Positions 21,101-47,949 are shown, numbered from the stretch's first letter. The stretch is DNA of 64,000 bases from Dimorphilus gyrociliatus (GCA_904063045.1 CAJFCJ010000076.1:67858-131857), one strand, 5' to 3'. Notes: generated from the letters alone by a model not told the origin. Made by a program: numbers and translations.

Positions 21101-21951
21101 TGAAAAGACAAGATTTTACAGTTACTCTTTCTCTGAAATACCTTCTTTTGGTTATGCAATTTCATTGTTTCCATAGCAATATTTGTAATATACCCAAAAA
21201 TTTACGGGTAAGAGTTGGTGGTAAGTAGAATTATTAATTTATTTATTCAAAATTTTCATTCATTTTTATATAAAACAAAGATAAAACAGATACTTTATCC
21301 ATTTGCCAATCTGGAGGATTATGCTACGAAGCAAATTATGGATGTTTCCCTAGTAAATACTACTATTGTTTTTTAATTCTTAAATTTTAATAGGGAAAAT
21401 ATTTTCAGGCACTAAATTTGAAAACTATGAATAAAAACTATGGAGAAACAACATGCATTGTTGCTAATTTGATTGAAGATGAACAGAGTACATTAATCAA
21501 TTTTACACTTGAACATATTGCTTTTGATAATAGATACGAAACTTGTCATAATGCCAGTAGTTTTCCATTTAAAGTAAGATTCCCTTGGCCTACTTATGCA
21601 AATAATGTAAATGATATCTTCAATGTGAATATAACTGGTAGTAATTTAATCTGTGACCGAAAGGATAATGTAATTTTAAAACAAAATTTATTTGTCTATG
21701 TTCTATTAGATCATCAAATCAATGCTGAATTTTCAGGAAATTTTTACCATTGTAATTTGAATATTAACACCAAAACTTTTTGTCAATTTGAATGTAATTG
21801 TAAAGGAGAAATGTGTCAAGCCGTTTATATTAAATATTGGGATGAAAATGAAATTCTGAGTATATGCGAAATATCAATAAACTTTCAATTTGTAGAAATA
21901 ATAATACTTTGGTTTATTGTTAATTATCTGGCACCTTGTTTACCATTTTAA
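21101..21951 (+). CDS. Small secreted protein with an uncharacterised 'PWP...CxFxCxC...CQAVY' domain
   Basis: Exon 1 MKRQDFTVTLSLKYLLLVMQFHCF... ends at a GTAAGT donor; exon 2 ICQSGGLCYEANYGCFP; the last exon is ORF 21418-21951, homologous to domains at 41.7 kb and 45.6 kb. Confidence 0.65.
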
Positions 21952-22799: not shown

Positions 22800-24470
22800 C
22801 TCTATAATTGGAAATAACATTTATGGCTTTATCCTATTTTCAGTATCAACATGATTAACTGTCACATCTATTTCTTGGTTATTAGCCAATTTTAATCTTG
22901 TTGCATAATATTTTCTTCTGCCATCTTCATATAATTCTACTTCATATAAACATTTGGTTACATCTGCAGCTGTTATCTCATATGGTCCATTCCATTTAAA
23001 CTTGGTATCCTTTCTATACATCTGTGAATATTTTCTCTCCTAATATGTACCTACCTAATTGTCATCTTTATAGGTTGGTGGTTTTCTCATCAGGGTTATA
23101 TTAGCTCTATTCCTGTATTCCTTTTTCTTTATTACTGATTTACATATTGCAGTTGTCCTTAATTCATCCATGTCTTGCTTTCTATCAAATAAGAATTTGG
23201 TTGTTGGCTCTATTCTTGGAATTGTTAGCAATGTATCCAACATGTTTTGATTTCTAAGCCCATATAGTAATTCATGGGGAGTTTTTCCTGTACTTACAAC
23301 TGGAATTTGGTTGAGGCAGCCTTGAATAATTGGTAACTGCTTTACCCAATTGGTATACCCTTCTATTACCAGTAATTTATGTAGTGCTCCTCTTACTTCC
23401 AAGTTTCTTCTTTCTACTATGCCATTGCTTTGGCTATGAAAGGCTGTAGTTTTGATTTTCCTTACACCCAAGGATGTGACAAGCTCAGCAAATATCTCAC
23501 TTAAGAAGTTTCTTCCTTGATCAGTTAACATTTCGTCTGGTAGACCAAAATTAGGAAAATAATTATAAAACAAGTGTTTTAGAATCTCTTCTGAAGTTTG
23601 TCCCTTAAGAGGATACTGGTTTGTAAATCTTGACATATGATCTACAATAACCAAAATGTGCTTGAATGTATTATGTCCATTAAGAGGTCCAATAATATGC
23701 ATGGTAATTCTTTGTAGAGGCTCAACAGGATGTTGTGTTTCCATCAACTCATACCTATGGCTTGGTGCTCTTTTCTCTTGATTTGTTCCAGTACTTTTGT
23801 CAAAGCCACTTTATGTTCTTCTAAAGTGTTATTAAATATGATAATATCATCTATATAATTGAGGTAAAGTTTATCCATTCCATTTAAAACAAATGCTGCC
23901 ATAACATAGCTGAAGTGAGGTGGGGTATTTGCAAAACTAAATGGCACTCTATTAAACTCAAAGAGGCCAAATGGAGTTATAAATGCTGTTTTCCCTTTAT
24001 CTACTTTTATCTTAATGTGGTGGTAAGCACTTGTGAGGTCAAGTACAGAGACATATCTATTTTCTCCACCTAGTTAATCAAATAAATCTTCTTGATGAGG
24101 GACTGGATATCTGTTTTTCTTAGTCTGCTTGTTGAATTTTCTATAGTCAACACAAAAACTTTTTTTGTGTTCCTTCTTTCTTTTGTGCAAACACTTTTAC
24201 CTATTCTAATAATTCCACTATTCAGTAAGTCATTAACTTGCTCTTTACATTCATTCATGTTTATAGGTGGTAATCTGTATGGTCTTGAATGGGGTGGCTT
24301 CTTCAAAAAGAGAGGTGGTAAATCAAGTGTGCCAATATCTGTTTGATCTTTAGCCACAATCTCTTGAAATTCTGTAACAATAGTTATCAACTTTCTTCTT
24401 TCTTTTTCAATTCTGGTTAATTGCACTACCTTGTCTGAATTCTTTTGATTTCTGATCACTTCCATTGAGG
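22800..24470 (-). mobile_element. Ty3/Gypsy pol remnant (RT directly joined to the integrase core; GPY/F motif)
   Basis: VLDLTSAYHHI...KTAFITPFGLFEFNRVPF and YIDDIIIF; HIIGPL...IVDHMSRF...LTDQGRNF...SNGIVER; WNGPYEI. No RNase H between RT and integrase. Confidence 0.9.
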
Positions 24471-25345
24471 TTTTATCCTTAAGAGTAAATAATGTTTTTA
24501 AGTAAGTTTCTTTTCCATTCTCTTCTGTATATTAAATAATAATTTTTCGAAATTAGAATCATAAACAATTATTTTTTCTGGAAAAAAGAATGGTGGACAA
24601 TGATAGATGGAGCCACTACTGAATATACTGCCCATGCAACAATTGTAAAATTTTACTATAAATTGAAATTATTTCTTTCTCTCTTCTTAACACAGTAAAT
24701 GTGATGTTTCTATATCTTTTAAGTCTTTCTTTATTAAATGGTTTGTTCCAATTTTATTTTTTAACATTTGACAATTTTTATGAAAATTTTTTAATAATTC
24801 TTTAAACCTAGTTGGCGGCATTCAAAAAGGTTAGGCAAAAGCAAGGTCTAGATTAGGGTTAGGATAAAATCATACATTTATGGCCACTTTCTACTACATC
24901 CAAAATACATGCCACCACTCTCCATATTTCATCACCTGAAGTCCTTTTCATTATTGGTAGTCCATGTCCTAAAATCATCAGGTCTACTTAAAGAGAATCT
25001 AGCCTCATCCTAAAAATAAGTCTTGACCACTCTAGATTTTCACTAATTTTTTTGGGATAATAATATTTTCTCCATTTACAATCTTTAGAGGTGAGATCTG
25101 TTCTTTGCCTGATTCTTTTGTATTTGTAGTACAGATGTCTCTTAAGCATTTGATAAAATTTAACTGCCTAATATATAACCTTAAAAAGTTTCAAATCAGA
25201 AGGAATACATTCATTTATCTTTGTTCTTTTATTGTTAATAACTGCTGTTTTTATAATTATAATTGAACTTCTCTATCCAAAAAACATTATGCAGAAATAA
25301 TAATCCCATGGACATTAGATGACAGAAATATTCCATTTTTAACCG

Positions 25346-25441
25346 GATGCGACAGAAAACATCAATAAATCACTGCTTTTACCCTAACCATAATCCAGCC
25401 CTTGTCTGTACCTAAACATTTTCCATTACCCCTAACCCTTA
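25346..25441 (+). repeat. Half copy of MITE family A
   Basis: GGATGCGACAGAAAACATCAATAAATCACTGCTTTTACCCTAACC...CCCTAACCCTTAG. Confidence 0.7.
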
Positions 25442-25936
25442 GATGAGACTGAACAATGAAGATTAACAGATTTTACAGTTGTTATTAATCTTTGCTTTTC
25501 AGCAAAAATTTGAGTTCCTTGATTTACATAAAAGATTTACTTCTTTAACTCTAATAAATTTTGGATTAACATTTTTAAAAATGTTGTTGAAGGAAGCTTG
25601 AATGATTCCTGAAGAATTCTTTGCCTTCAGATTTTTTATTATAATGTTGATGAATATCATTCCTCTGTAGTCTTATCTTAACAGAATGCGGGAGAAGCAA
25701 ATACCCAAATCTAGCTAGGGTTAGAGAAAATACTGAAAGAAGAGCAATTCAGATAAAATTATAAAATTATTCTATATAATATAACATATAATACATTCCA
25801 TATGTTCATATTTCATATTAACTTTGTAATGTTAATTTAAAGGGGATAATCAACCTAATTTTATGATATTGCTTAGGTATTTCATGACTAGCCTTCTGCA
25901 GTGAAAATTTTGATATTTTATTTAACAACATCAATA

Positions 25937-28900
25937 ATGACAACAAAATGGTGCTCTTATCAATTTGGTTTATTTACTCTTCTATTTCCTTTAATTGATA
26001 GTTTTCTCTGTGACTTCAAAGGAAGAATATTGTCGCACAACCTAGACAGCGAGACTACAGCAAATTATTCAATGAGAATACTAAAAGAAGACAATGTATC
26101 TGTCTATGGCAAGATTTACATAAGTGTAACTCCAGCAAGGGAAAAGCAAAGTCTGGCCTTTGGTGTTGACATAACAGCTGAATTTCATAGAAAACTTTGT
26201 AGACATTTAGGTTATGATACTATACATTTTATTGCTGAAGTATGTGATCCACAGAATGGAAAGTATCACCTCGTCTTTTCACTTTTTTTATATTAAATTT
26301 TTAAAAATTAATTAAATAGAAACTTTAAAACTGATAATAGTAAATACTCAAGGAAAGCATGTTTTGTAAGATATCAGCAATAGAATATCTTATCTCTCAC
26401 TCTATAGATATATAACTGTTTCTTGTTTTTAACAGAAGAGCAATTGTCAACAAATATAGAACCATTGCTTCGTATTGTTTAAAATGCTTTAAAATTAAAT
26501 CTCCAAGTAAGAGTAGTATTATTGAATGTTTGGCAACAGGAAAAAATGTCCACTAGAATGCAAAATAGTTTGTCACCTGGTAGACATTTTATTCTGGATT
26601 CATTGAATTTTTGAATTAAGACTACTTTGCTATTTCTTGAATTTTGCAGTTGTGTTTGCAATTCTTAATACTCAATATCAAAAATACCTGCTTTTTGTTA
26701 GATATAAAATGAAAATCTATTTATTATTACAAAAAAAACATTCAAATAGAAGAATTTGTGACAAAATTCAATTTTATAAAAATAGATTGGATTTTGCAGT
26801 AATTGAAAACAAAAGATTTGCTGTACAGTTTACCAATGAAACAATGTTCTTGAAACTTGTTGAAAATTCTTCACTCACCTATGAAGTCATAAAATGCAGT
26901 AAAAATGAACTTCAAGGTGATTAAGCTATTGAAAAATAAAAAAAGACTGTCATTAATATAATAATTACTTTTTTTTAGATATTACGTCACTTCCTATGTC
27001 AGAATTTCATAAATTATTTATTTTTGAACAAAAATTACAAAATAGAATATCATTTATGTTTTTGTCAAAAACTCTTGGTTATTTTCCAGTTATAATTAAA
27101 GATTTAATTTCACATTCTCACAACAGCATTCGTTTGATGTGTAATATTGGAGGGAAAATACACCTTCCATTTTCAACAATTGTTGAAAGAATTGCAGAAA
27201 CATTTGGATCAAAATGCCCAACATTAAGTTACAATGTTGAGAATTTACAAGTTGGAATATTACGCAATTGTAAATGGAATACTGAACCATACAGTGGTTG
27301 CGAAATGCATTATGGATTTAAGATGGGTTATGTTATTGCTGGATATTGTCAAGAACATTTTAAAAAAAATACCAGTTTGAACATTAAATTCAATTTGTAT
27401 TTCTTTTGTAGTTTGTAAAAAAAATATGTCAGATGATACTTTTATGTTGTTCAACTCTATAAAAGAATATACATTGGCGGGAAACGAACGGGACCGAGAC
27501 ATCCTTCGTGGAATGCTCTTCCTATACCATAATAATTCTTGGTTCCGGCCAATCATTAAGAATTTAAAGAGTTTTGAGGTTGAAGCAGTCTGCGTATTGT
27601 TTGGTTATAAGAATGGTCTATTAATAAAGGGCAACAATTCTCTTGATCTAAGAATCAGGGCCCATTATGCTTTCACTTTATCTTGTCCAAATCCTTTGAG
27701 TATATCAGAATGTGTTAGAAAAGTTAATTATTCCTTTACAAGGTAAAAAAATAAATTCTAAATTTAAAGAAAAGACAAACTTTTTGATAGTCAGGATAAA
27801 TTTGGAGGTTCACCAAGCCTATACTCCCACTATAATATAGAGTGTAATGATAACGAAAGTAAAATGAGAAATAAGACAGATTCTTCAAACTAATAATCAA
27901 TTTTTTAATAGATATTAAATGCCAAAATAGAAATGCCTTTAATTTTGATAGTGGCTGTTACATTCATGTTGAATATAATAGAACAATGTCAATTGATGAT
28001 TCAGTAAAAGAATGTGAAAAGAGAAATTCATTTCTACCATATTTATCATTCAAAGAATATTCACTTTTACATTGGTTAACGAAAGGTGTTCAACAATCCA
28101 TTTTCACAATTAGCAGGATTATGCCCGGAAGTACGTAAACAGTATATATTTATATATATATATATATATAACTATTTCTTTAACAAACATATTGAAAGTA
28201 TTAAAATTGGTCAACGATTCAAGAGAACAACAGCATCTTGTATATGACGACATGAAACCGTACAACTTTCATGGTTTTACTCTCAATTTTCAAACAAGGT
28301 AAACAGTAATTTTGAAATAAAATATGATTAATTAATTAGGATATATTTTTCAAGATTTCTCGATTCCTGCTTCTCGTTATTCAGGCTAAAACCTTTCCAA
28401 ATGTTTTTTTATCCAAAATCCGATTTAAAATGCTTTTATTTAGAAAATATCAACAATCCTAGTTTAATATCATATATAACAGTCGATTTTAGTTGCCATC
28501 AAAGAATAATGAAAGATACTTTTTGTAAATTTCCATGTTAGTATGATTTTAGATTATGTTTTTTATGGAAAAGTAGACGCCTAATCCTTCTTATCGTAAA
28601 CAACAACAAAAAAATAGACGACTTCAACTTTTCGCTATCAATAGAAATGGAGAATAAAACTTTTGTTGGATGTAATGGAAATTTTTTTCATTGTATTGAA
28701 GATGGTCTATGTGTCAATTCGATAAATGTTTGCGATGGTGTGAAAGATTGCTTTTCCGGTGAAGATGAGAGAAATTGTTCAGATAATTCCGTATTCTTTT
28801 GCGATTTAAATACAACAATTCCTAGCCGATACGTTTGCGATTACGTCTACGATTGCCATAATAAACTGGACGAAATTTTTTGCAGTATGATATTTAAATT

Positions 28901-31900
28901 GTATAATCTATAAAACTTGTTTTTTTTTTTTCCATTTTCCATAAGAAATGACAGATTGTAATCTTCAATTTCGGTAAAAAGATAATATGAATACGTTGAT
29001 AGATTTTATATAAACTCACCATTTTTTTTTTTTAACACAGATGCGATAATATGCAATGTATCGATAAAAATCTAGTTTGCGATGATGAGAAACACTGTTT
29101 CGATTCAAGCGATGAAAAATGTTCAATAGAAGATTTTAATACTAATCATTTACCAAAAGAAGGTTTTCAATTGTAAAAAGTTCATTTTTATATTAATAAA
29201 ACATTTTCTAACTCACAAGTTTGTGAAAAATACAACAAATTTCAATGCGATAATAAGTGTATATCGAAGAGTAAAGTTTGCGATTTTTATTCTAATTGTT
29301 ACGATGAAAAAGATGAAAAGACTAGTGAATGCCAATCTTTGGATAAATTCAATAATTTTGATTGTTCCGCTTTAAAAAATTTGACAGAATTCAAATGTCA
29401 AGTTGTTTATACTTCGATGGGAAAGCTTTTAACTAAAGTACACTTCCCTTTCTTAGCTTTGGATGAATGTAATAGAAAAGATTGTCCAATTGGTCAATAC
29501 TTGTGTAAACTTAGTAAATACTGTATATCTATTAAACAAGTATGCGATGGAATTGTACATTGTACTCATTACGATGACGAATTTAATTGCGGTACAATCC
29601 TTTTACATAGTTTTTTTTAGCCAAACATCGCAAATAATACAAAGTACTCAATTGATAGAAAATTTTAGACCAAAAGGCTACTTAAAATGTAGAAATGAGC
29701 ATCTTTTTGTTCCTTTAAACAACATTTGCAATGGTATAATTGATTGTAAATTTGGAAATGATGAATTATATTGTAATTTAAGCATAAATTGCCCAAGTAA
29801 TTGTCTATGTAAACAATTTCACAGCATTGAATGTTCAATGAAAACTAATGAATTAAATCTAAAGACAATTCTTTCAAGTCATTTTAAAACTATAGAAATT
29901 TCAGACAAAGCCAATAATGTAAAATTTCCATCAATTGAAAATACTTTTGCAACTGTGTTGTCATTTCAAAATTCTTCAATTTTCAATTTTCAAATATCAA
30001 TTAATTTTCCAAATGTTATTTATCTGTCTTTTAAAGATTGTAAATCATTGAACATATCTAGAATACTTTTAAATCCATTAAACAATTTACAACAATTATA
30101 TATTAGAAATTCAATTATAAAAATGGATAATTTTACATCATTAAAAAATGCTAGAAATTTATTATCCATTAATTTTTATTCAATAAATTTGAATTATTTA
30201 AATGAAAAATTTTTGTTAAATTTAAGAAAACTTGAAAATTTAACAATTGAAAATTGTATTATAAATGATTTTCATAGAAATATATTCAATTCTTTAACGT
30301 CTCTTCAACGTTTATTATTAAAAAATACGAAAATACCAATGAAATATAAAAGTGCGTTGATAAAACCATTGAAATCTCTTCGAGTATTGCATAGTGAATA
30401 TTTTTCATTTTGCTGTTTTTCCTGGCAATATACAAAACATATTAAAAAGTGTTATCCAACGCAATCTTTATTCAATTCTTGTAGCGATCTCCTCGAATCG
30501 AAATCGCTTCGTTCAGTTCTTTGGATTCTATCAATTTGCGCTATCATTGAAAATTTTATATCAATTTGTTTTAGAGGATTAATTTCGAAAAAGCAGAAAA
30601 ATTGGTTTCATTTGACCTTGTCCCTTGCTGATTTTTGTACATCAATATACTTGCTTATTGTTGGAAGTGTTGACGCATTCTACAGAGGTGAATATATAGA
30701 AAATGATTACAATTGGAGAAATAGCGTCTTCTGTAAAGCAATTGGATGGTTTTGCAGTTGGTCAATATTACTATCATCTCAGAGTCTTTTTCTAATAACA
30801 GTAGAAAGATATGCAATTATCGTTCATCCATTCAAGAGAATATTTGCAAGACCAATAATATTTATATTCATTGCTATTATGTTTATAATTGCAGGACTGA
30901 TATCGGCAATTCCATTATTTGCATATAATGTAAGGGCTAGAAATACTGGAAGATAAATAAGTTATGATATTTTATGTCCAATATATTAGACGTTCTATTC
31001 CAAAAGTCCAGTTTGTTTTACCTTGCACATCTCTAGTGAAAAGGTAGAAGGATGGCTGTATTCTTTTCTAGTTTTTGGGATATTAATGTCCGTTACGTGC
31101 TTAGTCATTTTTGGTTTATATTTAAGAATTTGGAGAGAGACGCTCAAGGCAAAACAACTAATCAATAACAAAGAATTTTATAAAAATCAGCAGAAAAAGT
31201 TCAAATTAAATATATTTTTAATAGTAACAACAAATTTATGTTGCTGGTTTCCGGTTTCAGTTTTAGGTATACCCCTTTTTTAAACATCTTATGTAAAGTT
31301 ATTTCACCTCAATTAACTCAATTCTCTTCTATTACATGAAATGGAACAGGAGTATACACTACATTCTTTAATTTAATTATTAAGAAAGATATCTATGTTG
31401 CCATAGTGATTGTTATATTACCTTTAAACTCTGTTATAAATCCACTATTATATACTCTAAGAGATATAAAGCTCTATTACTCATCATTGAGACAGAAGGG
31501 AGAAAAGAAGATGTAATTAAATATAGATTTTATTAAATGATAATTAATCTTAACTTTTACAGATTGAATCAAATTAATGACGTCGTAGCGTTAAATCTTT
31601 CAAATTGTTTTTATTAGAATAACATAAAAATAAAACTAGTTAGGAAATTTCAATACTGTTTTCTCTTTTCCAGATTTATCATATATTCAATTATTGAATA
31701 ATTGCTTAGTGGATAAAAATTCACTAATCTTTTTAGAAAGACTTAGGAATAATCAAAAATTTTACAAAATGGAAAATATTTATGAAATTGGAAGAGATAT
31801 TTGCAAACTTTTAAAAGTTGCTCATAAAAACAATCTCTCTTACAATGGTTTTATTGATTTTTCAAATATTTACCTAATTGTTTGTATATTGTTTTATTTA

Positions 31901-32079
31901 TTCATTTTAGAATGACTTTTCTCCATATTATATCTTTGTAGGTAAATAGAAATGGTAAATTTTATAATTTAACAACTAAACATCTGGTTTCCGCAAAGGA
32001 AGAGGAATTAAAGAAAGATATGATCAGTTTTGGTACATTTTTAAAGAAAGTCCTTCAAAAACGGATACACTTCATTTAG
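25937..32079 (+). CDS. GRL101: GRL101-like receptor 1: signal peptide, divergent SRCR-like domains, C-type-lectin-like domain, 6 LDLa, LRRs, class A 7TM, and a kinase-like cytoplasmic tail
   Basis: Signal-like MTTKWCSYQFGLFTLLF; SRCR-like LCRHLGY and VCVLFGY; CTLD-like GCYIH...KECEKR; six LDLa (e.g. VCDGVKDCFSGEDERNC); LRRs; 7TM motifs LADF, ITVERY, LCCWFP, NSVINPLLY; three tail exons 31563-31606, 31674-31879, 31942-32079. The N-terminal exon boundaries are approximate and the symbol denotes the family only. Confidence 0.8.
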
Positions 32080-32149
32080 ATTATAATTTTGCTGATATGA
32101 CAAATTTTTTCATTTAATAAATAATTAATGTCATTAGTAAAATAATTTA

Positions 32150-32510
32150 AATTAGTATAAAAAGACTCCAAATAGACTTCTTCCAATTCCTTCTAAAAAC
32201 CATAAAAGACAAATATATCCATATATGAAATATACTTATCAAATTTTGGTACCAAAGAGAATTTTCAACTTTTCAAGCTCATTCGTAAATGTCATGATAA
32301 AGAAGAAATCATCAAAGAAAACATTTCTTAAAATTAGAGTGCTTTCTAAAATATCTTGCTTTGCTCTGTTGTCCTTTGTAGTTTTAAAGAATTCTATCAA
32401 GTATTTAGCCTTCTAAGGGAAGAATTACAGGGGACCAATGATTTAAAATCATTAAACATTGAAATGTTTTCCCTCTTCCAGTTTCAGTAGATTATTGTTT
32501 TCTTTTTAAA
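32150..32510 (-). pseudogene. Possible NACHT P-loop remnant
   Basis: ETGRGKTFQCLMILNHW (Walker A-like), with a weak Walker-B-like LLWFLEGIG downstream; multiple stops. Confidence 0.4.
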
Positions 32511-32829
32511 AATGCGAGCCTGCAGCAATATAAGAAAGATAAGAAAGGTCTAATTCATCAATTATTCTTCTTCTAATGTCAACATACACCATTCTCTCTT
32601 CAATACTAGCAATAGAACTATACATCTATGTGAGCTATTATTTGAACAATCCATCAACAGAAGATGTTGTCTTTTTGAAGAAAGAAGCCCTCCTCAATTT
32701 CATTTATTCTTACCAAAATTAAGGCTTAACAAAAGCTTAAGGACTAGACAGGAGAAAAGACTTTATGGACTGTATGGTTAGGGCTAAAAATTTAGAAAAT
32801 GTACTTTTTACTTGAAATTAAATGATAAG

Positions 32830-33900
32830 CTAATCATAGAATTTGGCAAACTGAATGTAGACTTATTTCTCCATCTGGATAGGGTGTCAGTAATGTAGTA
32901 TCAAATTGCATTGGTTCTGCTTCTGCTGTTCTCTGTCCCCTAATTCTGTCTTGAGGCATTCGTACACTTGAACTACCAACTTGCATTTCATGACTTGAAT
33001 TTCCATACTTAGTGGAGTTTTCAGGAGATTTTAATAAAACATACTGGTCGTGTTTCATAACCAAAGCTTCACTATCAATAGTAGCACCAAAATTCTTTGT
33101 TCTCTCTCTGTATATTCTTCCATTTTTAGCATTAACTCACTAATTTCCTTGTCATCTTTAATTGTTTTATTGGTAGAGGGGTCATTTCCTGCACTAGACA
33201 TAGTAAGAAGATGAGGATCCTGCAACTGCATCAAGTATGTGCTTTCCTGAAGTAGGGTTGTAGGTAAGTATTGATCCAAATAGAGCGAAATTATAAATGA
33301 ACCCCTTGGAAAGGATATTTGAGTGTGCCCACTTTATACAATTTGAGCTATTCTGACAAACTTTTCCCAGTCATAAGAGTATGGCCTAAGAAGAAGGATT
33401 TGAGTTGTCTATAATATACCTTATCCTATTCCTTGTGAAGGCATTTGGTTTGGCATCTGTATTTTGTATCTGTCTGAATACTGCATTGTTGTCTGTGTGA
33501 AAGGTAACCTCTATTCTTTCATAATGAATTCACATGGTTGACACAATTCATCTGGATTTTTTAATAGAAAATACTATTACAAATATAATTTTTATCATCT
33601 TTCACTTCATAATAATGTGACACTTTCATTCAGAGCTAAAGGAAATATAAATCTACAATTGAATACAACTGTTGATGAGCATCCTGAATAAAATGGTACA
33701 CTAAATATGAAACAGTTTTCTTGTTGAATATTTATATATTAACTCCATTTCAGAATCAAATAAAACCACTTCAACAGTTCCATTTGAAAAAACAAAGTCA
33801 TCTATAGTATCTTCTCTAATTCCAGAAAGATCAACTAATCGTCTAATAGGTACTATTTTTGAGAATACATTGGAAACAGATGCCATGGCATAACCATCAA
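32830..33900 (-). mobile_element. BEL/Pao LTR-retrotransposon remnant
   Basis: IVPIRR...VLFDSE and FHTDNNAV..IQN...FTRNRIRYI (Pao RNase H-like); HDQYVLLKSPE...PYPDGEI (integrase C-terminus-like). Confidence 0.6.
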
Positions 33901-34005
33901 CTCAAAGATATATAACGTCACATGATCATGGTGAAAATGAATGAATTTCATTGTATCTCTTGCATTTGAGAATGTGACAGGCAAAGTTTATCAATTACCA
34001 TGCAT

Positions 34006-34212
34006 GGATGCGACAGAAAACGTCCACAAATTGGTGCTTTTACCCTAACCCTAACCCAGCCCTCGGCTGTTTCTAACTTTTTCCATTAGCCCTAACCCTT
34101 AGAGGAGACCCTCCTAAGTACAAATCAGTTGCTCTCTTCTTCTTCCTAACCATTTCTTAATCCAAAATTTAGTCTTGAAATTTCTCATTTGTGGACATTT
34201 TCTATCGACCCC
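34006..34212 (+). mobile_element. MITE family A
   Basis: Same TIRs and TAACCC core; degenerate 9-bp TSD ACCATGCAT / AACATGCAG. Confidence 0.85.
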
Positions 34213-34481
34213 AACATGCAGATATAATATCATAATGATAAAGTCAAAAAATGTACTCTCTGTAATGGAAGACTCCTCTGTTGCATTGAAATATCTGTCA
34301 AGATGCAATATGATAATCTTTTCACAAACGCAGAAATCTTTTGCAGAAATGAAGAGATAACAATAAAATCCATTAGCCATATGATAATATGGAATAAGCT
34401 ATTGTTGAACTTCTGAAAACAAATAAATGTAAACTGTTAAACAAACTTACTTTGTTTAAAGCAGCCTATTAATTTACAGTT

Positions 34482-35207
34482 TTGCCTGTGAAAACAGATT
34501 CTCTGCCAAATGTTGATTATTCGAAAAGAGTGGCTAATTTTACAAGGCAAAAACTAAGGCCAAGTGAACCAAAAGAAGTACACTTTTATTTAAATACAGA
34601 TTTCATCCCAGATGATTTTTTGAAAGATGCCATCTGTGAAAATAAAGAGAGAATTCTTATTTTTGGTAGCAGCCATCAACTTAATTTGCTTGGTCAGTCA
34701 AAACACTGGTTCATTGATGGGACATTTAAAATGGTAAAGGATCCTTTTTATCAGCTCTTATCTATATGCAGCTATGTCCAGAAAGATGGTGAAATGAAAC
34801 ATATTCCATTGGCATTTATTTTTATGACATCAAAGAAAAGAAAGAGTTATAAAAAAGCATTTAAGGTATCATTTTGAGAAATTCATTCTTTAACTACTTT
34901 CAGATGAATGTTTCATTCTTCAGAGTGTCAGACACATGACTGGTATGCCACAGCCTGAGAAGATGACAATTAATTTTGAGATGGGTCTGTGGAGAGCTGT
35001 ATCCAAAATATATTCGGAATCACAAATTCATGGATGTGTATTCCATTTTATATAGCAAGCAATATATAGGAAAATACAGGTAAAACATTTAATTTAACCT
35101 TTAAGGTTTGTCTTTACAATTATGATCCATCAAGTCCCTTGGATACTCTGGAAAGTATATGGAGAACGGAGAGGACTGGAGAGACATGAGAAAGCTGATG
35201 GCTTTAC
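34482..35207 (+). mobile_element. MULE transposase fragment with two introns, cut by an assembly gap
   Basis: WFIDGTFKMVKDPFYQL...KKAFK|gt; GCVFHFI*QAIYRKIQ|gt..ag; MRKLMAL followed by Ns. Confidence 0.85.
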
Positions 35208-35217
35208 NNNNNNNNNN
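35208..35217. other. Assembly gap (10 N)
   Basis: The run of n joins the MULE fragment to receptor 2. Confidence 0.99.
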
Positions 35218-35249
35218 ATTTGACTCAAATATTTCCCTTCTTCCAGACT

Positions 35250-38043
35250 GTAATCCGGTAAACCAGTATAAATGCAATGAAGAGTGTTTCCCAAGAACTA
35301 TAGTTTGTGACCAAATCCAGAATTGTATTTCTTCAGGAGATGAACAGGAAGATATTTGCAAAAACTTAATCCATCCAAATTCTTATACAGATAGAGATTT
35401 TCATTATAGCTCTTTTGGAAATGTTTATGTTAAAATTCCAAATATTTATAGATTTGCCCTAACAGAAAATAAAACCTGTAAAATTGGTTTCTATAAATGT
35501 ATATTTCAAGAATTTTGCATTTCAATTGAGTTGCTTTGCGATGGAATTAATCATTGTTTTTTAAAAGATGACGAAACTAGTTGCGGTAGATAAAAAAAAT
35601 CAATCAAAACAAACCAATGTGAAATATAATTTTTTTAAGAAAACTTACATTTTTATGGTTATTTCAAATGTCAAAATCAGAGTTATTTTCTAGAAATATC
35701 AAGGATTTGTGACGGTATCGTTGATTGTCGGCTTGGAAGCGATGAAATTTTTTGTGGAAATGAATCAGAATTACCTAAAAATTGTTTACAATTGTTGCCT
35801 TTTGAATTGGAATGTCAACTTTTACAAACAAAAGAAAACAAAAATAAACTAAGTGTTGTCCCAGAAATTTTTTTAACTGATTTTTTCAAAAGAGTCAACA
35901 TTTATGGAAATTTCAATATAAAAAATAAAAATAGATTAATTAATTTAATTATTTTAAAAATTGAAAACAACTTCCGGTTGCAAAATCATAAATTATCAAT
36001 TCCAAATCTGGTTTTCCTTTCTTTAAAAATGAATAACATTACAAACTTGAATTTCATCATAGATAAATATCATAATAATCTTTTACAATATCTTGACGTA
36101 TCCCATAATCCAATTTATTCAATTCAAGAATTAAATAGTCTGTTTAGTAAATTTCTGCTATACTTGGATATTTCATATACAAAAATTTCAGTATTATTAA
36201 ATCACCATTTTAATGGCACAACTCATATAAAAGTGTTTAGAGTTAAACATTGCAATATAAAAAAAATTGAATTAAACAATGCAAAGTTTTTAGAAAGTTT
36301 ATTTGAATTGAATTTTCAACATTCAAAATATTCTTTTAATATTGAGTTTCCTTTTCAAAAAATGACAAATTTAAAAATTTTCTACGCAAATAATTTTCGT
36401 ATTTGTTGTAAAATTTGGAAAGTAATAGGCAATTTTGTAAAATGTCAACCTTCTACTTCACTATTTAGTACATGTTCAAATATTTTAAGTTCAAATTTAT
36501 TGAAATATATGTTTTGGGGTTGTGGATTAATTGGGAATATTGCCAATATATTTTCATTATTTGTCATTATATTTTCAAAGTTTAAAGGAAAATTTTACAA
36601 GTGTAGTTTAACAATTGGAAATTGTTTCACCTCTGTCTATATGATTTTGATTTCAATTGTTGATTCTTACTATAATGAACGATATTTGGAGAATGAAAAG
36701 TATTGGAAAAATAGTATTTTATGCCAATTTTGCGGTGTTTTAATGACTTCCGGTTTACTTATATCCAGTTGTAGCCTATTGTTTATGTCAATTGACAGAA
36801 TTTTAGTGATAAAAAATCCATTTCAAATTTCAAGATTTTCAGATTTTTCAATAATAATATCAATTTTAATTATTATTCTTAGTTGTTTACTAAGTCTCTT
36901 ACCAGTTTTCATATATAAAGTTTCAATTTTTTGTTCTTTTGCTTTAAATAGATTATAATAGGCAACTTTTCTTTTTTTCCAGGATTATCATTCTCAATAT
37001 TCAATTTGTTTTAATATTCAAATTGGTGGTAAAAATTTTACTGGATGGATATTTTCAACTATTGTTTTTGGTTTTTTTGAATTTTTAATAAATTTAATAA
37101 CTTTAATAATTAATTTAATCCTATTAAAATAATTATTAAATCATTAAAAATGAAAAATAGTATTAAGAATAGAACTGTTAAAAAATCATTTGTTTTTGCT
37201 ATACTAACAAATGTTTTATGTTGGTTTCCACTTTCAATTTTAGGTTGATATAACATTTTTTTTTTAAAAAAAACAAAAGTAAACTTTTTTGTTTTTTTTT
37301 TTTTGTCAATAGTTTTTTCATCAACACTAAAAGAATTGACATTGCGTAATAACGCTAAAGTTTTACTTGTTATATTCCTTATTCCTATTAATTCTGTAGT
37401 AAATCCATTTATCTTTACAACAACTTCAATATATCAATTTTATAATATAAAGAAAGATGAATTATTAAAGAGAGGGTTTGATAATTTTTTTTCTCTATTT
37501 AATCATATAAAAAATTATCCTACTACTAAACAGGAAGGAGAATGTAGAAGATGTTGAATTGGCAGTTAGAAAAAAATGTTAGTAGGCCTAGTTTTGTTTT
37601 TGTCAATTCACCTATCAATTAGAAATTTAATTTTTTTTTAGTTATCTCATGCTTAAATGATTATGATGATTTTCATATATGTTTTACACAACTATTTAGA
37701 AGGTTACCATCTTCCAACTCCTCAATAGAGTACTATTTATTTAAAGATAACAACTATTTTCAATGTATTAAACAAATTTCGATTGCCTGTTGCTTTTTAC
37801 ATTCACAACTGGTATCATTTGGAGGATTATTAACATTGGATAATATCATTTATCATGTAAAATAAATACAAAAAAAATGAAAGAAAAAAAAATTTTTTTA
37901 TTTTTTAGACAGAAAAACGGAAATTTTATGTTTATTGGAAAAAGTATAAAATTTTTGGTAATTTTCATGAAATTAATGATATTTATGCATTTGGAAAATT
38001 CATTCAACATATTCTATATTTGAGAAAACAACTTTTAAATTAG
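35250..38043 (+). CDS. GRL101: GRL101-like receptor 2 (5' part lost in the gap): at least 3 LDLa, LRRs, 7TM and a kinase-like tail; one apparent 1-bp frameshift at ~37130
   Basis: LDLa units (VCDQIQNC..GDE, LCDGINHC..DDE, ICDGIVDC..SDE); LRRs; MSIDR, LCWFP, NSVVNPFIF; tail exons 37534-37577, 37642-37856, 37909-38043. The frame shifts in an A-run of TM5-ICL3. The symbol denotes the family only. Confidence 0.75.
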
Positions 38044-38692
38044 CAAGAAATTTCTGAACAAAAAAAGTTTTCTCTGATTATTTTCTAAAATTTTTTCTTT
38101 TTGTCTTTTGTATGATTCTTTTGATATAATACAAAACTTTTTTCTGTTGGTATCAGATAGTGTTTAGTCATATCTCAACTGAATGTTTGCAATTTTAGGT
38201 TACTTATTGTATACTGTGTAAATTAGTAAACACAGAACAATTGCTCATTTTTTAAACAATATACTCAGGGCTATGTTTAGTATTTGTTTTTTTTTGTTGA
38301 TTTCCTACCTACAAGACCTACGGTGTTTTCATCTCTTTCATAATTTATATAATACTCTTTAGGGTCAGTTACTGAAATGTTTTAAAGAGGTTTTAGGGTC
38401 AGGTATCCAAAAATGGTGTCGATTAAGGCATAACAAGTATATTTGAAGCTTTGATAATTCTTTGTATTTGGTCTCAAAAGTATATACTGGTCCCATCAGG
38501 CGTACGCAGAAAAGACTATACTGCAACAGAATCCAATGGAAGATAATTCACCTTTCCACTCACTCAATGTACAAAGAAGAACTGAAACAGTTCTTGATAT
38601 TTTCAATAGGCTTGTTAGTGTTATACTGTCAGCATCATTCCATTTCTTTGAAATATCACCCAATACTGCACCCAGGCGCAGCAAACACATAT

Positions 38693-38858
38693 GGGGTCGA
38701 CAGAAAACGTCCACAACTGAGAAATTTCAAGACTAGATTTTGGATTGAGAAATGGTTAGGAAGAAGAAGACAGCAACTGATATATACTTAGGAGGGTCTC
38801 CTCTAAGGGTTAGGGTTAGGGTAAAAGCACTGATTTGTGGACGTTTTCTGTCGCATCC
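38693..38858 (-). mobile_element. MITE family A (internally shortened, inverted)
   Basis: GGGGTCGACAGAAAACGTCCACAA...TAGGGTTAGGGTTAGGG...TTTGTGGACGTTTTCTGTCGCATCC. Confidence 0.85.
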
Positions 38859-39254
38859 ATTTTAAAATTTTAAGGATAAGGGTCCTTTGAGATTTTCATC
38901 CCGAAGTGTGGAGATTTTGTCCAAATTATTCTTTTTATAACTCTGAATACTAACAAACTACCAAAACCCTTTTTTTTTAATTCAGTAAATTTAAAGGAAA
39001 TCATAGCAGAGCAGGAAAAAAGAACTGTGAGAAGAAGATAATATGTGGAATTTTATGACATAGTTCCTGATGTGCAAAACCAGATTCAATAAAATTTGTA
39101 AACAATTCCTTTTTCAAATTTTTCTTCAACTTATTATTGGATGATAATATTTTCCTTGTTCTGCTAATTCCAAATCAGATTGTTTTTCAAACAAAGTTGA
39201 TGGTGAGAGTGGTTGCTGAAAACAAGTGTCTGTTAAAAAAATACAACTATTTAT

Positions 39255-41656: not shown

Positions 41657-42500
41657 TTAAAAATTTGTTATCTGATAATGACAAATTTTCATATTTTCAC
41701 TTGAATTTTCAAATGCTTTGACATAAACAGCTTGACAATATTGTAATTTACAACCACATGAATATGTACAAAATGAGTTGTCATCTCCAGATATTAATAA
41801 ACAACTGAGGAATTTTGCATTGAATATTGGGTCAGGTTGAGGATCCTCTGCAACATATACTAAAATTTCAGCTGTAGGTAATTCTTCCGTTTTGTTACAC
41901 ACTTTTTGAAATGATGTCCTGAAATTTCAATTTCAAAATCAGGATATAAATGATCAACAGATGGCCATGGTATTCTTAAGGTAAATTCATTTGCTAAAGT
42001 GACATCAATGCAAGTTTCAGAGTCTTTATTATCAGTAATTCATATCAATTTTTCGTCCTTTTGTCTATTGGTGTCTTTAAATATTGGTCCATCAAAACAG
42101 CTAAAAACATAATTATTATATTTGATTGAATTGGAAGAGAGGTCACAAGTATTATCATTTTTAGTGGTACATCGGATTGGACGATAATCATTTACATAAA
42201 CAAAATATTTGCAATAATTCTCCGATTGGCATTTATCTCTACAAGCATATAGATCTGGCTCAGCAAATTCATTGTTTGAACCACAGTCTGATGCAAAACA
42301 AGTTATTGACTTGAATGCAACTCTGTCATAGGAAACACTTGCAGAATTACCCTGAGCCATGCATACTTGAGAACTTAAAACACACTCAATAGTTTGAAAA
42401 TTGTAACTAAAACATTTGCAATTTGACAATGATAAACATTTTGCAGAACATTCTTCCAGACTTACAGAAATGTCAACTTTCAAAATTGTTGTGAATTGTG
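41657..42500 (-). pseudogene. 2x PAN/apple plus 'PWP...CQAVY' domain gene with one in-frame TGA (42040) and one frameshift (~41895)
   Basis: EECSAKCLSLSNCKCFSYN, ACRDKCQSENYCKYF, then KLI*ITD...TLRIPWPSVD...FCTYSCGC..YCQAVYVK. Confidence 0.7.
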
Positions 42501-42993: not shown

Positions 42994-44790
42994 TTAATCT
43001 GAGTCATATTCAAGCTCTATAGAATTTCTTGATAATTGAAATTTATGATAAATACCAAGAATACCATTTCTAATATTTGGATTTGATGTTAGATTTATTC
43101 TTTTTAGTTTTGGACATTTCGCTGCCAGATTCCCAATATCAACACATATTTTCTCATCTAAATTACAATCGGATAAATGAATTTCCTGTAGGGTGTCTGC
43201 GGAATACATCAATCCTTTACATATTTTAGACAAACCCTCTCCCATATTTCTGTTCATTGTTAAATCTATTGTTTGAATTGTAGAGAAATTCTTCAGACCT
43301 TTTCCAATATCTTCACATAATTCCTCATTCAAATCGCAATAACTAATAATAAAATCTTTTAAACCAATTGATAATTGAGAGAGGTGATGAAAAAATGAGG
43401 AAAATGTAAGTCCATTATGGTATTTGTCTGTCAAATGTATAGTTTCAACTTTTGAGGATTTACATAATAACATTCCAAAATTTCTCCACAAAGCTTCATT
43501 TGCAATAAAGCTACAGTGAAACCCTACTGCTTGTTTTTTACGAGACATATTAATCCATTTAAAAAGAAATGAAATTCCATCTCGAAGACCACTATTGCCT
43601 ACTAGATTTATTGAGGGATTATTGGACAGTTTACTTCTCAATAGATGTTTAATATAAAACCAAATATTCCCATCTAGGCCACAATATGAAAAATCAATTT
43701 CCTTTAGAGAATGACACAATGTTTCAAGCCCCATCACAAATTTTTGAAATGGAATGTTTTAATTTTGAATTCTTTGATAGTTTAATGATTTGAATGTTTG
43801 TACATTTATTCAAAAGATTTCCCAAACTCTGGCACATATTCTCATTTAAATTACATTCTACAAAATTGATTTCCCTTAAAGTATCTGATGCTTTCTCAAG
43901 CTTATCGCAAATAAGCAAAAAATCATTTTCTGTATATAGATTCATACTCAGGTCAATTACTTCAAAGTGGCAACCTAAAGCTGAGAAGTCATCAATACAT
44001 TAAAGGATATTCTTGGAGGAGAGGCAGCCTCTAAAACCAACTTCTTTAATGACTTTTGAAGACATTTGAAGCTTTCTCAAAATAGCTGCTAGTTCAATTG
44101 ATCCATTTTCATTTTCATTTAGGCGTATTATGTCAAGATGTTGACAATTTACTAACAAATTTCCAATATGAAAATACAAAGTTTTGTCAATATGGCACTT
44201 TGAAAAAGTGAGTTCTCTTAAAGAATTTGAAAATGATAACAGAACTCGACATATATCAATTGATTCATCAGCTGGAAAAGAACTGTCAATTATAATGACC
44301 TTTTCAACTTTAGAACATTTTATCAATACACTCTCTAACAGTTTTCTCTCTTTTTCATCCATGGTCAAATTTTCAATTTTGATTTCCTTAAGAGTATCAG
44401 ACCACTTAGAAATCACATTATAAACACTTGATAGCCAAACATTATCATTCCATATGTATCTTAGATGTATTGTATCAATTGGAAATTGATCAGTTAAATC
44501 CATTAAGGAGTTGACAATATTTAATTCATCCAAAGAAACACACAAGATGCTATCATTCACTTTTTTTAGAATAATGAATACATCTCTTATCCTGTCATGG
44601 AAACAGGAGAGTAATGATTGAATATCATCATTTCCATTAAGTTTTATTGTTTCAAAAGTTGAAAAATTTGTCGACAAATTCCCAGTATATAACTTTATCT
44701 GTATATAGAATTTGTTTTGTTCATAATCTACTCTTTCTAACGATTTCGATGAGTTGTGTAGACCTTTACCAACAAGTGTCCGGATAAAAT
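42994..44790 (-). pseudogene. RNase-inhibitor-like LRR gene with one nonsense codon (44000-44002) and one frameshift (~43730)
   Basis: The three track ORFs join into one LRR protein (LREINFVECNLNENMCQSLGNLLNKC..IKLSKN), paralogous to the LRRs at 60161-62554. Confidence 0.75.
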
Positions 44791-47600: not shown

Positions 47601-47807
47601 GAATACAACAGAAAACGTCCACAAATGAGTGCTTTTACCCTAACCCTAACCCAGCCCTTAGCTGTACTTAACCTTTTCCATTACCCCTAACCTTTAGAGG
47701 AGAACCTCCTAACTACAAATCAGTTGCTGTTTTCTTCTGCCTAACCATTTCTCAATCCAAATTTTTGTCTTGAAATTTCTCATTTGTGGACGTTTTCTGT
47801 CGACCCC
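47601..47807 (+). mobile_element. MITE family A
   Basis: Perfect 22-bp inverted repeat (47608-47629 / 47779-47800) and perfect 9-bp TSD AGGTGGCAC (47592-47600 / 47808-47816). Confidence 0.92.
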
Positions 47808-47949
47808 AGGTGGCACATGTTCTCAATTGAGCTGAGATTGATGCCCTTTGCTGGCCATTCAAGAGAATGGATTTCTTTCATTTCAAAGGCTCTTTTAATC
47901 GTCCATCCTTACACAAATAGAATCTCCAGTTCGTCCACAAAATACTAAC

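What the first reader, a model, noticed from the sequence alone, without database searches (positions are those of the whole stretch)
31440..38043. Two tandem LDLa-LRR GPCRs carry a conserved, spliced mini-pseudokinase as their cytoplasmic tail
After NPxxY/helix 8, both receptors splice into three extra exons with matching phases and lengths (44/44, 206/215 and 138/135 bp), giving ~130 aa. These trace a protein-kinase fold in the correct order. Receptor 1: VVAL (beta3) - YIQLLNNC..LIFLERL (beta4-hinge) - IGRDICKLLKVAHKNNLSYNGFIDFSNIYL (alphaE, catalytic loop) - KDMISFG (alphaF). Receptor 2: LAVRK - HICFTQLF..IEYYL - IKQISIACCFLHSQLVSFGGLLTLDNII - NDIYAFG. HRD, DFG, the Gly-loop and the activation segment are absent. 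A GPCR with a fused dead kinase could be a built-in scaffold or a G-protein-independent output. I do not know this as a described GRL101 architecture, but could not search. Conserved exon structure despite low identity suggests selection.
Basis: partly seen in the sequence, partly recalled or inferred. Interest (0 to 1): 0.85.

Follow-up and report, generated by a model that had tools for sequence, protein, structure and literature searches.

The report
Receptor genes with kinase-like spliced tail
Two neighbouring hormone-receptor-type genes of an AT-rich worm genome carry three extra small exons coding for a conserved 130-residue inner tail that may be a shrunken, dead remnant of a protein kinase; that origin is not proven, and the second gene looks broken as assembled.

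Summary
After helix 8, both LDLa-LRR-7TM receptor genes have three exons of 44/44, 206/215 and 138/135 nt. All have GT..AG borders and the same phases (2, 1, 0), and they give tails of 129 and 131 aa.

The same tail, including the 44-nt exon, sits on two receptor genes in an unrelated public contig (L001). One of those genes has the first two exons fused into one ORF, so this is a real, old coding module.

The kinase reading is only partly supported.
- Against: Pfam, HMMER against PDB sequences and an exhaustive HMMER search all found no kinase. AlphaFold was uninformative, and the tail is half a kinase in length.
- For: protein-language-model neighbours of both large exons are about 85% kinase fragments. 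Coral LGR-type 7TM receptors carry a roughly 270-aa tail that passes Pfam's PK_Tyr_Ser-Thr threshold. The worm tails align to it collinearly (alphaE, catalytic loop, alphaF), but weakly: hhalign E 0.11, shuffle p about 0.02.

No RNA run was listed, so splicing is inferred. Receptor 2 has a 1-nt frameshift in TM5/ICL3 and loses its 5' end at the gap, so only receptor 1 looks intact.

The scan has reported the same tail on paralogues elsewhere in this genome. I found no paper describing it.

The parts
28647..30929 (+). Receptor 1 ectodomain and TM1-4. Exons are about 28647-28884 (2 LDLa), about 29326-29591 (LDLa) and 29659-30929 (LDLa, LRRs, TM1-4). The 5' end and signal peptide were not located.
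   Evidence: Pfam Ldl_recept_a E 1e-11 and 2e-4. 7tm_1 scores 40.6 bits against a cut-off of 30.5. Splice combinations were checked.
30990..31266 (+). Receptor 1 exon with ECL2, TM5, ICL3 and TM6. It is 277 nt, phase 0 in and phase 1 out, and intact.
   Evidence: 7tm_1 positions 149-222. Junction 30929|30990.
31350..31512 (+). Receptor 1 exon with TM7 (NPLLY) and helix 8. The donor GAT|gtaatt overlaps the stop codon that an unspliced reading would use.
31563..31606 (+). Receptor 1 tail exon a: 44-nt mini-exon, phase 2 in, phase 1 out.
   Evidence: A 44-nt exon of the same size occurs in R2 and in the L001 minus-strand gene.
31674..31879 (+). Receptor 1 tail exon b (206 nt, 68 codons). It holds the alphaE-like helix and the catalytic-loop-like motif H-K-N-N-L-S-Y-N-G-F-I-D-F-S-N-I.
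   Evidence: (kinase fragments among nearest clusters)
31942..32079 (+). Receptor 1 tail exon c (138 nt, including the stop). It holds the alphaF-like motif K-D-M-I-S-F-G.
35208..35217 (.). Assembly gap upstream of receptor 2's first visible exon. Receptor 2's 5' end is unresolved.
35247..36919 (+). Receptor 2 exons 35247-35585 (2 LDLa) and 35640-36919 (LDLa, LRRs, TM1-4).
   Evidence: Pfam Ldl_recept_a E 8e-7. LRR_8 E 0.001 and 7tm_1 30.2 bits. Junctions.
36983..37243 (+). Receptor 2 TM5-ICL3-TM6 exon with a 1-nt frameshift located within 37113-37129. This is either a real disabling mutation or an assembly error in an A/T run.
37313..37475 (+). Receptor 2 TM7 (NPFIF) and helix-8 exon.
37534..37577 (+). 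Receptor 2 tail exon a (44 nt).
37642..37856 (+). Receptor 2 tail exon b (215 nt), with the motif L-H-S-Q-L-V-S-F-G-G-L-L-T-L-D-N-I-I.
37909..38043 (+). Receptor 2 tail exon c (135 nt, including the stop), with the motif N-D-I-Y-A-F-G.

Best explanation
Both genes are LDLa-LRR rhodopsin-type (LGR/GRL101-like) receptors. Their mRNA is spliced past the apparent stop at the end of the helix-8 exon into three small exons, which add a structured 129-131-residue cytoplasmic tail. The tail is an old, selected module of this receptor family.

Its most likely origin is a tyrosine-kinase-like pseudokinase domain of the kind still recognisable on coral LGR-type receptors. In the worm it would have shrunk to the segment from about beta4/5 through alphaE and the catalytic-loop region to alphaF. 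It has no Gly-loop, no VAIK lysine, no catalytic Asp, no DFG, no activation segment and no alphaG-alphaI, so it cannot phosphorylate anything.

By inference only, it works as a folded docking or regulatory module on the receptor's inner face. It stands where related receptors have a disordered Ser/Thr-rich tail, and it would bind a partner or pair with another tail when the receptor changes state.

What is shown: the exon anatomy, the conservation across four genes in two genomes, and the absence of catalytic residues. What is inferred: the splicing, the kinase ancestry and the function.

Only receptor 1 is intact as assembled. Receptor 2 is either a recent pseudogene or carries an assembly error.
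For: - Exon sizes, phases and GT..AG borders are identical in plan in R1 and R2 and in the L001 minus-strand gene.
- Exons a and b are fused in one ORF in the L001 plus-strand gene, which shows the a-b reading frame is real.
- All four tails stop about 15 residues after the alphaF-like motif.
- An HMM of the foreign tails picks three of the four large window tail exons (b and c) into the top 6 of 1922 segments.
- The receptor cores are only 27% identical, so frames this old would not stay open without selection.
- ESM-Atlas nearest clusters: for R1 exon b, 85 of 100 carry Pkinase/PK_Tyr, best named score 0.92. For R2 exon b, 86 of 100, best named score 0.88.
- The coral receptors P0119, P0123 and P0125 combine an LGR-like 7tm_1 with a tail that scores 25 bits on PK_Tyr_Ser-Thr (cut-off 23.1, E 1.4e-5). 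That tail hits almost only kinases in the PDB, with HRD replaced by HNN and DFG by GGF.
- hhalign aligns the worm tails to the coral tail collinearly from alphaE to alphaF. The score is 16.3 against a column-shuffle null of 11.2 +/- 2.0, and 6 of 300 shuffles reach it.
- All four exon-c peptides align to the coral alphaF region. Target ranks are 3 to 86 of 615 length-matched segments for seven of eight exons.
Against: - No kinase match by Pfam on single exons, even at E 10.
- No kinase match by HMMER against PDB sequences, with a profile or with single sequences.
- The coral-tail HMM does not beat shuffles for R1 or R2.
- The exhaustive HMMER search of 1.84 billion representatives found only L001's own ORF.
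- hhalign E 0.11 is not significant by its own statistics.
- The rank test counts related sequences as if they were independent.
- Shared feature counts with the Atlas kinase clusters (95-110 of 256) fall in the range the tool assigns to chance hits or distant relatives.
- Exon c gave no kinase neighbours.
- AlphaFold on exon b gave pLDDT 55 and on the coral tail pLDDT 42, so there is no structural evidence.
- Intron positions in the coral tail are near but not the same as in the worm.
- No RNA run was listed, so splicing is unproven.
- R2 is frameshifted.
Confidence: 0.5

Rival explanations
1. The tail is a real, spliced, conserved cytoplasmic domain but is not derived from a kinase. It would be a lineage-specific, mostly helical module, and its two short motifs resemble kinase subdomains VIb and IX by chance or by convergence.
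For: - All sequence and profile searches for kinases were negative.
- The low-confidence AlphaFold model of exon b is three helices with no strands.
- The motifs are not invariant: the L001 plus-strand gene has Q, A and D where the others have H, G and N.
- The best coral-HMM match of L001's exon b is out of register.
- The Atlas documentation says a third of shuffled proteins also get ten of ten top hits in one family.
Against: - Two peptides only 30% identical both land on the same kinase-fragment clusters.
- The alphaE-to-alphaF alignment with a bona fide receptor-attached pseudokinase is collinear and beats 98% of shuffles.
- The same position behind an LGR-type 7TM is occupied by a recognisable pseudokinase in corals.
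Confidence: 0.33
2. The tail exons are not part of the mature receptor mRNA, or are used only rarely. The protein would normally end at the stop that overlaps the donor (R1) or 29 codons into the intron (R2), and the downstream frames would be relics or a separate transcript.
For: - No RNA evidence could be obtained.
- Stop-free runs of this length are common in this composition.
- R1 and R2 tails are not significantly similar by BLASTP.
- The R2 donor GTTTGA is weak.
Against: - Four genes in two genomes share the same order, phases and stop position, and three of the four share the 44-nt exon. In the fourth gene the first tail intron is absent and the frame runs on.
- A cross-genome HMM singles out these exons in the window.
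- The 44-nt exon has no room for a start codon and promoter of its own.
Confidence: 0.12
3. Receptor 2 is a dead copy. It would be 5'-truncated at a transposon and frameshifted in TM5, so only receptor 1 can carry a functional tail and the pair is not two working genes.
For: - 1-nt frameshift at 37113-37129.
- The first visible exon needs an upstream exon that is not found before the gap and the MULE fragment.
- Inverted copies of a dispersed repeat flank the gene.
Against: - All seven other exon frames, including the three tail exons, are open and the splice sites are intact.
- The shift lies in an A/T-rich run, where a one-base assembly error is plausible.
- A gap next to the gene signals poor local assembly.
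Confidence: 0.45

Closest known systems
Coral LGR-type 7TM receptors with a PK_Tyr_Ser-Thr-like tail. Examples: Orbicella faveolata LOC110052523 (P0119), Oculina patagonica P0123, Pocillopora damicornis P0125, Desmophyllum pertusum P0124.
   Same: - A rhodopsin-type 7TM of the LGR/relaxin-receptor kind: 44% identity to the Pomacea relaxin-receptor-like 7TM.
- Extracellular LRRs in the longer models.
- A spliced cytoplasmic tail that starts soon after helix 8 and lacks the catalytic Asp and DFG.
- The worm tails align collinearly to its alphaE-alphaF part.
   Different: - The coral tail is about 270 aa with a recognisable N-lobe (a VLLK lysine and an alphaC-like helix) and alphaH/alphaI, and it passes Pfam's threshold. 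The worm tail is 130 aa and passes nothing.
- Corals have CUB and MAM domains, where the worm has LDLa repeats.
- Intron positions are close but not identical.
- The 7TM domains show no special affinity.
- Homology of the tails is therefore plausible, not shown.
GPCR-TKL/K and GPCR-TK fusions of choanoflagellates, sponges, oomycetes and amoebozoans (PMC12716839, section 26).
   Same: A seven-helix receptor is followed by a C-terminal kinase-type domain, and none has been functionally characterised.
   Different: - Those carry full kinase domains found by InterProScan.
- Their 7TM domains do not cluster with LGRs.
- The paper found GPCR-TKs in sponges but in no other metazoan lineage.
- Here the receptor is an LGR-type rhodopsin GPCR of a bilaterian, and the domain is a dead fragment.
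Lymnaea GRL101 and the relaxin/Lgr3/Lgr4-type receptors (PMC8286064; hits).
   Same: LDLa repeats, LRRs and a rhodopsin 7TM with NPxxY and helix 8. The best named hit of receptor 1 is Pomacea 'relaxin receptor 2-like'.
   Different: - The 120 nearest relaxin-type receptors end in disordered Ser/Thr-rich or low-complexity tails. None matches the worm tail HMM or the coral tail HMM.
- The papers on GRL101 that I read do not mention a kinase-like tail.
Kinase-homology domains of receptor guanylyl cyclases and JAK JH2 (from general knowledge, not tested here).
   Same: A catalytically dead kinase-derived module inside a receptor that regulates output by contacts, not by phosphotransfer.
   Different: Those are full-length bilobal pseudokinases, most of which bind ATP. 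The worm tail lacks the whole nucleotide pocket.

Membership tests
LGR/GRL101-type GPCR (LDLa + LRR + rhodopsin 7TM) | LDL-receptor class A repeats in the ectodomain | tested here: met
   PF00057 E 1.1e-11 and 2.2e-4 (R1) and 8.4e-7 (R2). A motif scan finds 3 LDLa in R1 and 2 in R2; a further LDLa in each gene, missed by the pattern, was read by eye or found by Pfam.
LGR/GRL101-type GPCR (LDLa + LRR + rhodopsin 7TM) | Leucine-rich repeats between the LDLa repeats and TM1 | tested here: inconclusive
   LRR_8 is below the Pfam cut-off (R2 19.1 bits, R1 10.3 bits, cut-off 27). The region does align to LRR-bearing relatives P0001 and P0002.
LGR/GRL101-type GPCR (LDLa + LRR + rhodopsin 7TM) | Rhodopsin-family 7TM with NPxxY | tested here: met
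   7tm_1 scores 40.6 bits (R1, cut-off 30.5) and 30.2 bits (R2). TM5-6 matched. NPLLY and NPFIF read.
LGR/GRL101-type GPCR (LDLa + LRR + rhodopsin 7TM) | Uninterrupted reading frame through all seven helices | tested here: not met
   Met for R1. Not met for R2, which has a 1-nt frameshift at 37113-37129. The cause, mutation or assembly error, is unknown.
Protein kinase-like domain / pseudokinase | Significant profile match to Pkinase or PK_Tyr_Ser-Thr | tested here: not met
   No hit on single tail exons at E up to 10. No kinase in PDB sequence searches. The spliced whole tail could not be submitted because it has no reference.
Protein kinase-like domain / pseudokinase | Bilobal fold: N-lobe (beta1-5, alphaC) plus C-lobe (alphaD-alphaI), about 250 aa | tested here: not met
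   The tail is 129-131 aa. Only about 30 residues precede the beta5-like stretch and about 15 follow the alphaF-like motif. The AlphaFold model of exon b has low confidence.
Protein kinase-like domain / pseudokinase | Collinear similarity of the alphaE, catalytic-loop and alphaF core to a recognised kinase-like domain | tested here: inconclusive
   hhalign to the coral pseudokinase tail gives E 0.11 over 71-110 columns in the expected register. Six of 300 shuffles reach the score. Atlas neighbours are mostly kinase fragments.
Protein kinase-like domain / pseudokinase | Catalytic residues (VAIK Lys, HRD Asp, DFG Asp) | tested here: not met
   In the hhalign register the HRD position reads N-G-F, G-G-L or K-G-K, and no DFG is present. 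If the tail is kinase-derived, it is dead.
GPCR-kinase fusion receptors (GPCR-TKL/K, GPCR-TK) | 7TM followed by a kinase domain detectable by Pfam/InterPro | tested here: not met
   Not detectable in the window's tails. Met by the coral relatives.

The most novel reading that the evidence does not exclude
LGR-type hormone receptors acquired a pseudokinase tail before cnidarians and bilaterians split. Corals keep it nearly full-length, and this annelid keeps many paralogues in which it has been pared down to a 130-residue core of alphaE, catalytic loop and alphaF. That core would still be selected as a phosphorylation-independent signalling or docking module, making this a class of bilaterian GPCR-pseudokinase receptors absent from the literature.
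Probability: 0.35. Interest if true: 0.75.

Novelty: new variant of a known kind. Interest (0 to 1): 0.55.

Why it matters
GPCR-kinase fusions are reported from oomycetes, amoebozoans, choanoflagellates and sponges, and none has been characterised (PMC12716839). If the worm tail is a kinase remnant, an LGR-type receptor family of a bilaterian carries a built-in pseudokinase-derived module. It occupies the place where ordinary GPCRs have a disordered, phosphorylatable tail.

That would bear on three things:
- how these orphan receptors couple to GRKs, arrestins or other partners;
- a natural example of how small a kinase-derived interaction domain can become;
- gene annotation, because gene models for this receptor family would end too early, at the helix-8 stop.

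If the tail is not kinase-derived, it is still an unannotated conserved domain of an expanded receptor family.

Tried and rejected
- RNA evidence: the look-up of sequencing runs listed no run and its cap is one, so read laying could not be used.
- Exhaustive HMMER with a 3-sequence exon-b profile returned only L001's own 36-aa ORF.
- Receptor 1's long ORF found only two relatives in 5.8 billion proteins. This receptor family is very diverged, or longer models fall outside the length filter.
- The 120 relaxin/Lgr4-type receptors have no such tail. I had hoped to find intermediates there.
- The coral-tail search found only scleractinian corals.
- Intron positions of the coral genes were compared to test homology. 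The intron after the catalytic loop lies about 5 residues further downstream than in the worm, which is not decisive.
- AlphaFold on exon b (pLDDT 55) and on the coral tail (pLDDT 42) were both too poor for a fold search, so no fold search was run.
- The whole spliced tail could not be given to Pfam, AlphaFold or the Atlas because a spliced sequence has no reference.
- dN/dS between R1 and R2 was not computed, because at 27-30% identity synonymous sites are saturated.
- Pack-MULE capture of receptor 2 was considered because inverted repeats flank it. The repeat has five copies in the window and no target-site duplication is visible, so I do not claim capture.
The 29.4% G+C also fits Osedax frankpressi (29.08%, PMC10192322). 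I could not decide between them.

Full report
ANATOMY

The window is 70.6% A+T. It holds two same-strand genes with Pfam LDLa repeats, weak LRR matches and rhodopsin-type 7TM segments.

Receptor 1 can be joined without any frame break:
- about 28647-28884
- about 29326-29591
- 29659-30929
- 30990-31266
- 31350-31512

Its TM7 reads NPLLY. After helix 8 the frame meets a stop that overlaps a good donor (GAT|gtaatt).

Receptor 2 has the same plan: donor at 37475, then 37534-37577 (44 nt), 37642-37856 (215 nt) and 37909-38043 (135 nt). All six introns are GT..AG, 50-67 nt long, with T-rich acceptors. The phases are 2, 1, 0 in both genes. The tails are 129 and 131 residues.

THE GAP AND THE STATE OF RECEPTOR 2

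The gap at 35208-35217 sits between a MULE-transposase fragment (34482-35207; PF10551) and the acceptor of receptor 2's first visible LDLa exon (35247). That exon starts in phase 1, so it needs an upstream exon that I could not find. The gap is 2.3 kb from the tail and touches none of its junctions. Continuity across it could not be tested, because no sequencing run was listed.

Receptor 2 also cannot be read through TM5/ICL3. The exon 36983-37243 is 261 nt, but phase 0 in and phase 1 out requires a length of 1 mod 3. The frame has to slip by one base within 37113-37129, an A/T-rich run. Receptor 2 is therefore either a young pseudogene or mis-assembled. Receptor 1 is the safe example.

IS THE TAIL REAL?

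Open frames alone are weak evidence here. Shuffled versions of the window hold about 50 stop-free runs of 65 or more codons. The two tails are not significantly alike by BLASTP (E 3.9). However, the receptor cores themselves are only 27% identical, so the duplication is old.

Independent support came from a public contig. Receptor 1's long ORF hit a 521-aa protein (P0001, 29% identity) on a 17-kb Logan contig (L001). That contig carries two convergent LDLa-LRR-7TM genes.
- The minus-strand gene has a 44-nt exon, a 185-nt exon and a 138-nt exon after helix 8, with the same phases.
- The plus-strand gene has exons a and b fused in a single 214-nt exon, followed by exon c. An intron-free version of the a-b junction is direct evidence that this frame is coding.
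- All four tails stop about 15 residues after the same motif.
- An HMM built only from the two L001 tails, searched against all 1922 stop-free segments of the window, ranks R1 exon b, R1 exon c and R2 exon c 3rd, 5th and 6th. The individual E-values are poor (0.4-1.2), but three of the four large tail-exon (b, c) target segments reaching the top six by chance has a probability of about 1e-7.

I conclude that the tail is a conserved coding module. Its splicing remains inferred.

IS IT A KINASE REMNANT?

Negative results:
- Pfam on each exon, no kinase even at E 10.
- hmmsearch and phmmer against PDB sequences, no kinase.
- Exhaustive HMMER of a 3-sequence exon-b profile against 1.84 billion representatives, only L001's own ORF.
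- AlphaFold of exon b, pLDDT 55, three helices.

Positive results:
- The ESM-Atlas feature search puts both exon-b peptides (30% identical to each other) next to the same clusters of 60-70-aa kinase fragments. For R1, 85 of the 100 nearest clusters carry Pkinase/PK_Tyr. For R2 it is 86 of 100. The best named scores are 0.92 and 0.88.
- The shared-feature counts (95-110) are in the range the tool gives for chance hits or distant relatives, so this is a lead of moderate weight.
- Exon c (45 aa) gave only unnamed short clusters. That result is neutral, and it shows that kinase neighbours are not automatic for peptides from this genome.

A BRIDGE FROM CORALS

I searched the 7TM region of the Pomacea relaxin-receptor-like hit. 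The 120 best relatives, which are Lgr4/relaxin-type receptors of molluscs, arthropods, echinoderms, hemichordates and amphioxus, end in disordered Ser/Thr-rich or low-complexity tails. None matches the worm tail.

One hit was different: Orbicella faveolata LOC110052523 (P0119). It has 337 residues after NPILY.
- That tail scores 25.0 bits on PK_Tyr_Ser-Thr (gathering cut-off 23.1, E 1.4e-5) over profile positions 73-137, which is beta5 to the catalytic loop.
- It finds 108 PDB sequences at E below 1, almost all kinases.
- The alignments show HRD replaced by H-N-N. DFG is G-G-F in the sequence. It is a pseudokinase.
- A tail-only search found the same architecture in Oculina, Desmophyllum, Pocillopora and Stylophora, with PF07714 and PF00001 precomputed on the same proteins. 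Desmophyllum and Pocillopora models also carry MAM, and the Desmophyllum model CUB and LRR.
- The gene models splice the tail from six exons.

So an LGR-type 7TM with a kinase-derived dead tail does exist in public data.

LINKING WORM TO CORAL

- The coral-tail HMM does not score R1 or R2 above shuffles. The L001 minus-strand tail does (3 of 500 shuffles), but partly out of register.
- hhalign of the four worm tails against the coral tails gives E 0.11. The 71-110 aligned columns run in the expected order: alphaE, then H..NI(L/Y), then the alphaF motif D-I-x-x-F-G. The score of 16.3 exceeds 294 of 300 column shuffles (null 11.2 +/- 2.0) and the reversed alignment.
- I ranked all stop-free segments of 40-110 aa from the window and L001 with the coral HMM. 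Seven of the eight tail exons fall at ranks 3-86 of 615 (Mann-Whitney p 2.5e-4). All four exon-c peptides align to the coral alphaF region.
- The eight targets are relatives of each other, so that p-value overstates the evidence.
- Intron positions are near but not identical. The 7TM domains show no special worm-coral affinity.
- AlphaFold of the coral tail, with five close sequences, was too poor to use.

READING

The tail is real and selected (about 0.85). Kinase ancestry is more likely than not, but unproven (about 0.55-0.6).

If it is kinase-derived, it is only the middle of the domain. There is no Gly-loop. The 15-residue exon a is too short and too variable to call beta3. There is no alphaC, no catalytic Asp, no DFG and nothing after alphaF. 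The activation segment is shortened, with 31 residues between the loop Asn and the alphaF Asp, against 46 in coral.

It cannot be an enzyme and cannot form a bilobal fold. 'Mini-pseudokinase fold' therefore overstates what is there. 'Kinase-derived remnant domain' is the defensible wording.

The tails have few Ser/Thr (9-11 of about 125). The related relaxin-type receptors have Ser/Thr-rich tails, the usual substrate for GRK/arrestin control. A folded docking module in their place is my inferred mechanism.

LITERATURE

- No paper holds both GRL101 and pseudokinase.
- Veenstra's GRL101 analysis (PMC8286064) does not mention a kinase-like tail.
- Further searches gave nothing relevant.
- The 2025 eLife survey of GPCRs (PMC12716839) describes GPCR-TKL/K and GPCR-TK fusions in choanoflagellates. 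[quoted passage not shown]
- The Osedax paper notes lineage-specific expansions of class A receptors (PMC10192322).

EARLIER NOTES OF THIS SCAN

The scan has already reported this tail on several other paralogues of the same genome, with follow-up agents reaching the same reading. Those notes claim the tail also occurs in molluscs, mites, spiders, echinoderms, hemichordates and amphioxus. I could confirm only corals. The bilaterian relaxin-type receptors I examined lack it. My searches did not reach true GRL101 orthologues, so that claim stays untested here.

Noticed in passing
window 37113-37129: There is a 1-nt frameshift inside receptor 2's TM5/ICL3 exon (36983-37243, 261 nt). The TM5 frame stops at TAA, and the ICL3/TM6 frame opens one base earlier. 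This is either a real mutation or a homopolymer assembly error.
   Followed up: partly
window 34004-34213 and 38692-38860; also 47608-47808, 1934-2119, 25345-25449: A roughly 210-nt dispersed repeat containing a short telomere-like (CCCTAA) run has five copies in the window. Two of them flank receptor 2 and the MULE fragment in inverted orientation (91-96% complementary). No target-site duplication is visible. ORFs on it (34114-34380 minus strand, 38462-38791 plus strand) share a ...RNFKT.FW..KWLGRRR.QLI.T peptide.
   Followed up: partly
window 34482-35207: A MULE-type transposase fragment (PF10551, E 3e-4), split over several frames, abuts the assembly gap just upstream of receptor 2.
   Followed up: partly
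window 23055-24465 (minus strand): Retroelement integrase-like and neighbouring ORFs lie upstream of receptor 1 (read from the ORF list only).
   Followed up: no
window 21418-21951 (+) and 41657-41902 (-): Two ORFs share a Cys-rich end motif, C-x-C-x(5,6)-C-Q-A-V-Y-[IV]-K. They belong to an unidentified repeated gene family flanking the receptor pair.
   Followed up: no
window 42994-44677 (minus strand): Two long ORFs look like ribonuclease-inhibitor-type LRR proteins (NLR-like). They were not examined.
   Followed up: no
L001 6062-8946 (+) and 13805-9320 (-): Two convergent LDLa-LRR-7TM genes on a 74.6% A+T Logan contig (SRR23372229) both end in the same tail. The plus-strand gene has lost the intron between tail exons a and b and has Q/A/D in place of the H/G/N motif residues.
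   Followed up: yes
P0124, P0126 (coral proteins): Coral relatives combine MAM (plus CUB and LRR domains in the Desmophyllum model P0124) with the pseudokinase-like tail. UniRef names P0124 'Protein kinase domain-containing protein'. The architecture is in databases without, as far as I found, any discussion.
   Followed up: partly
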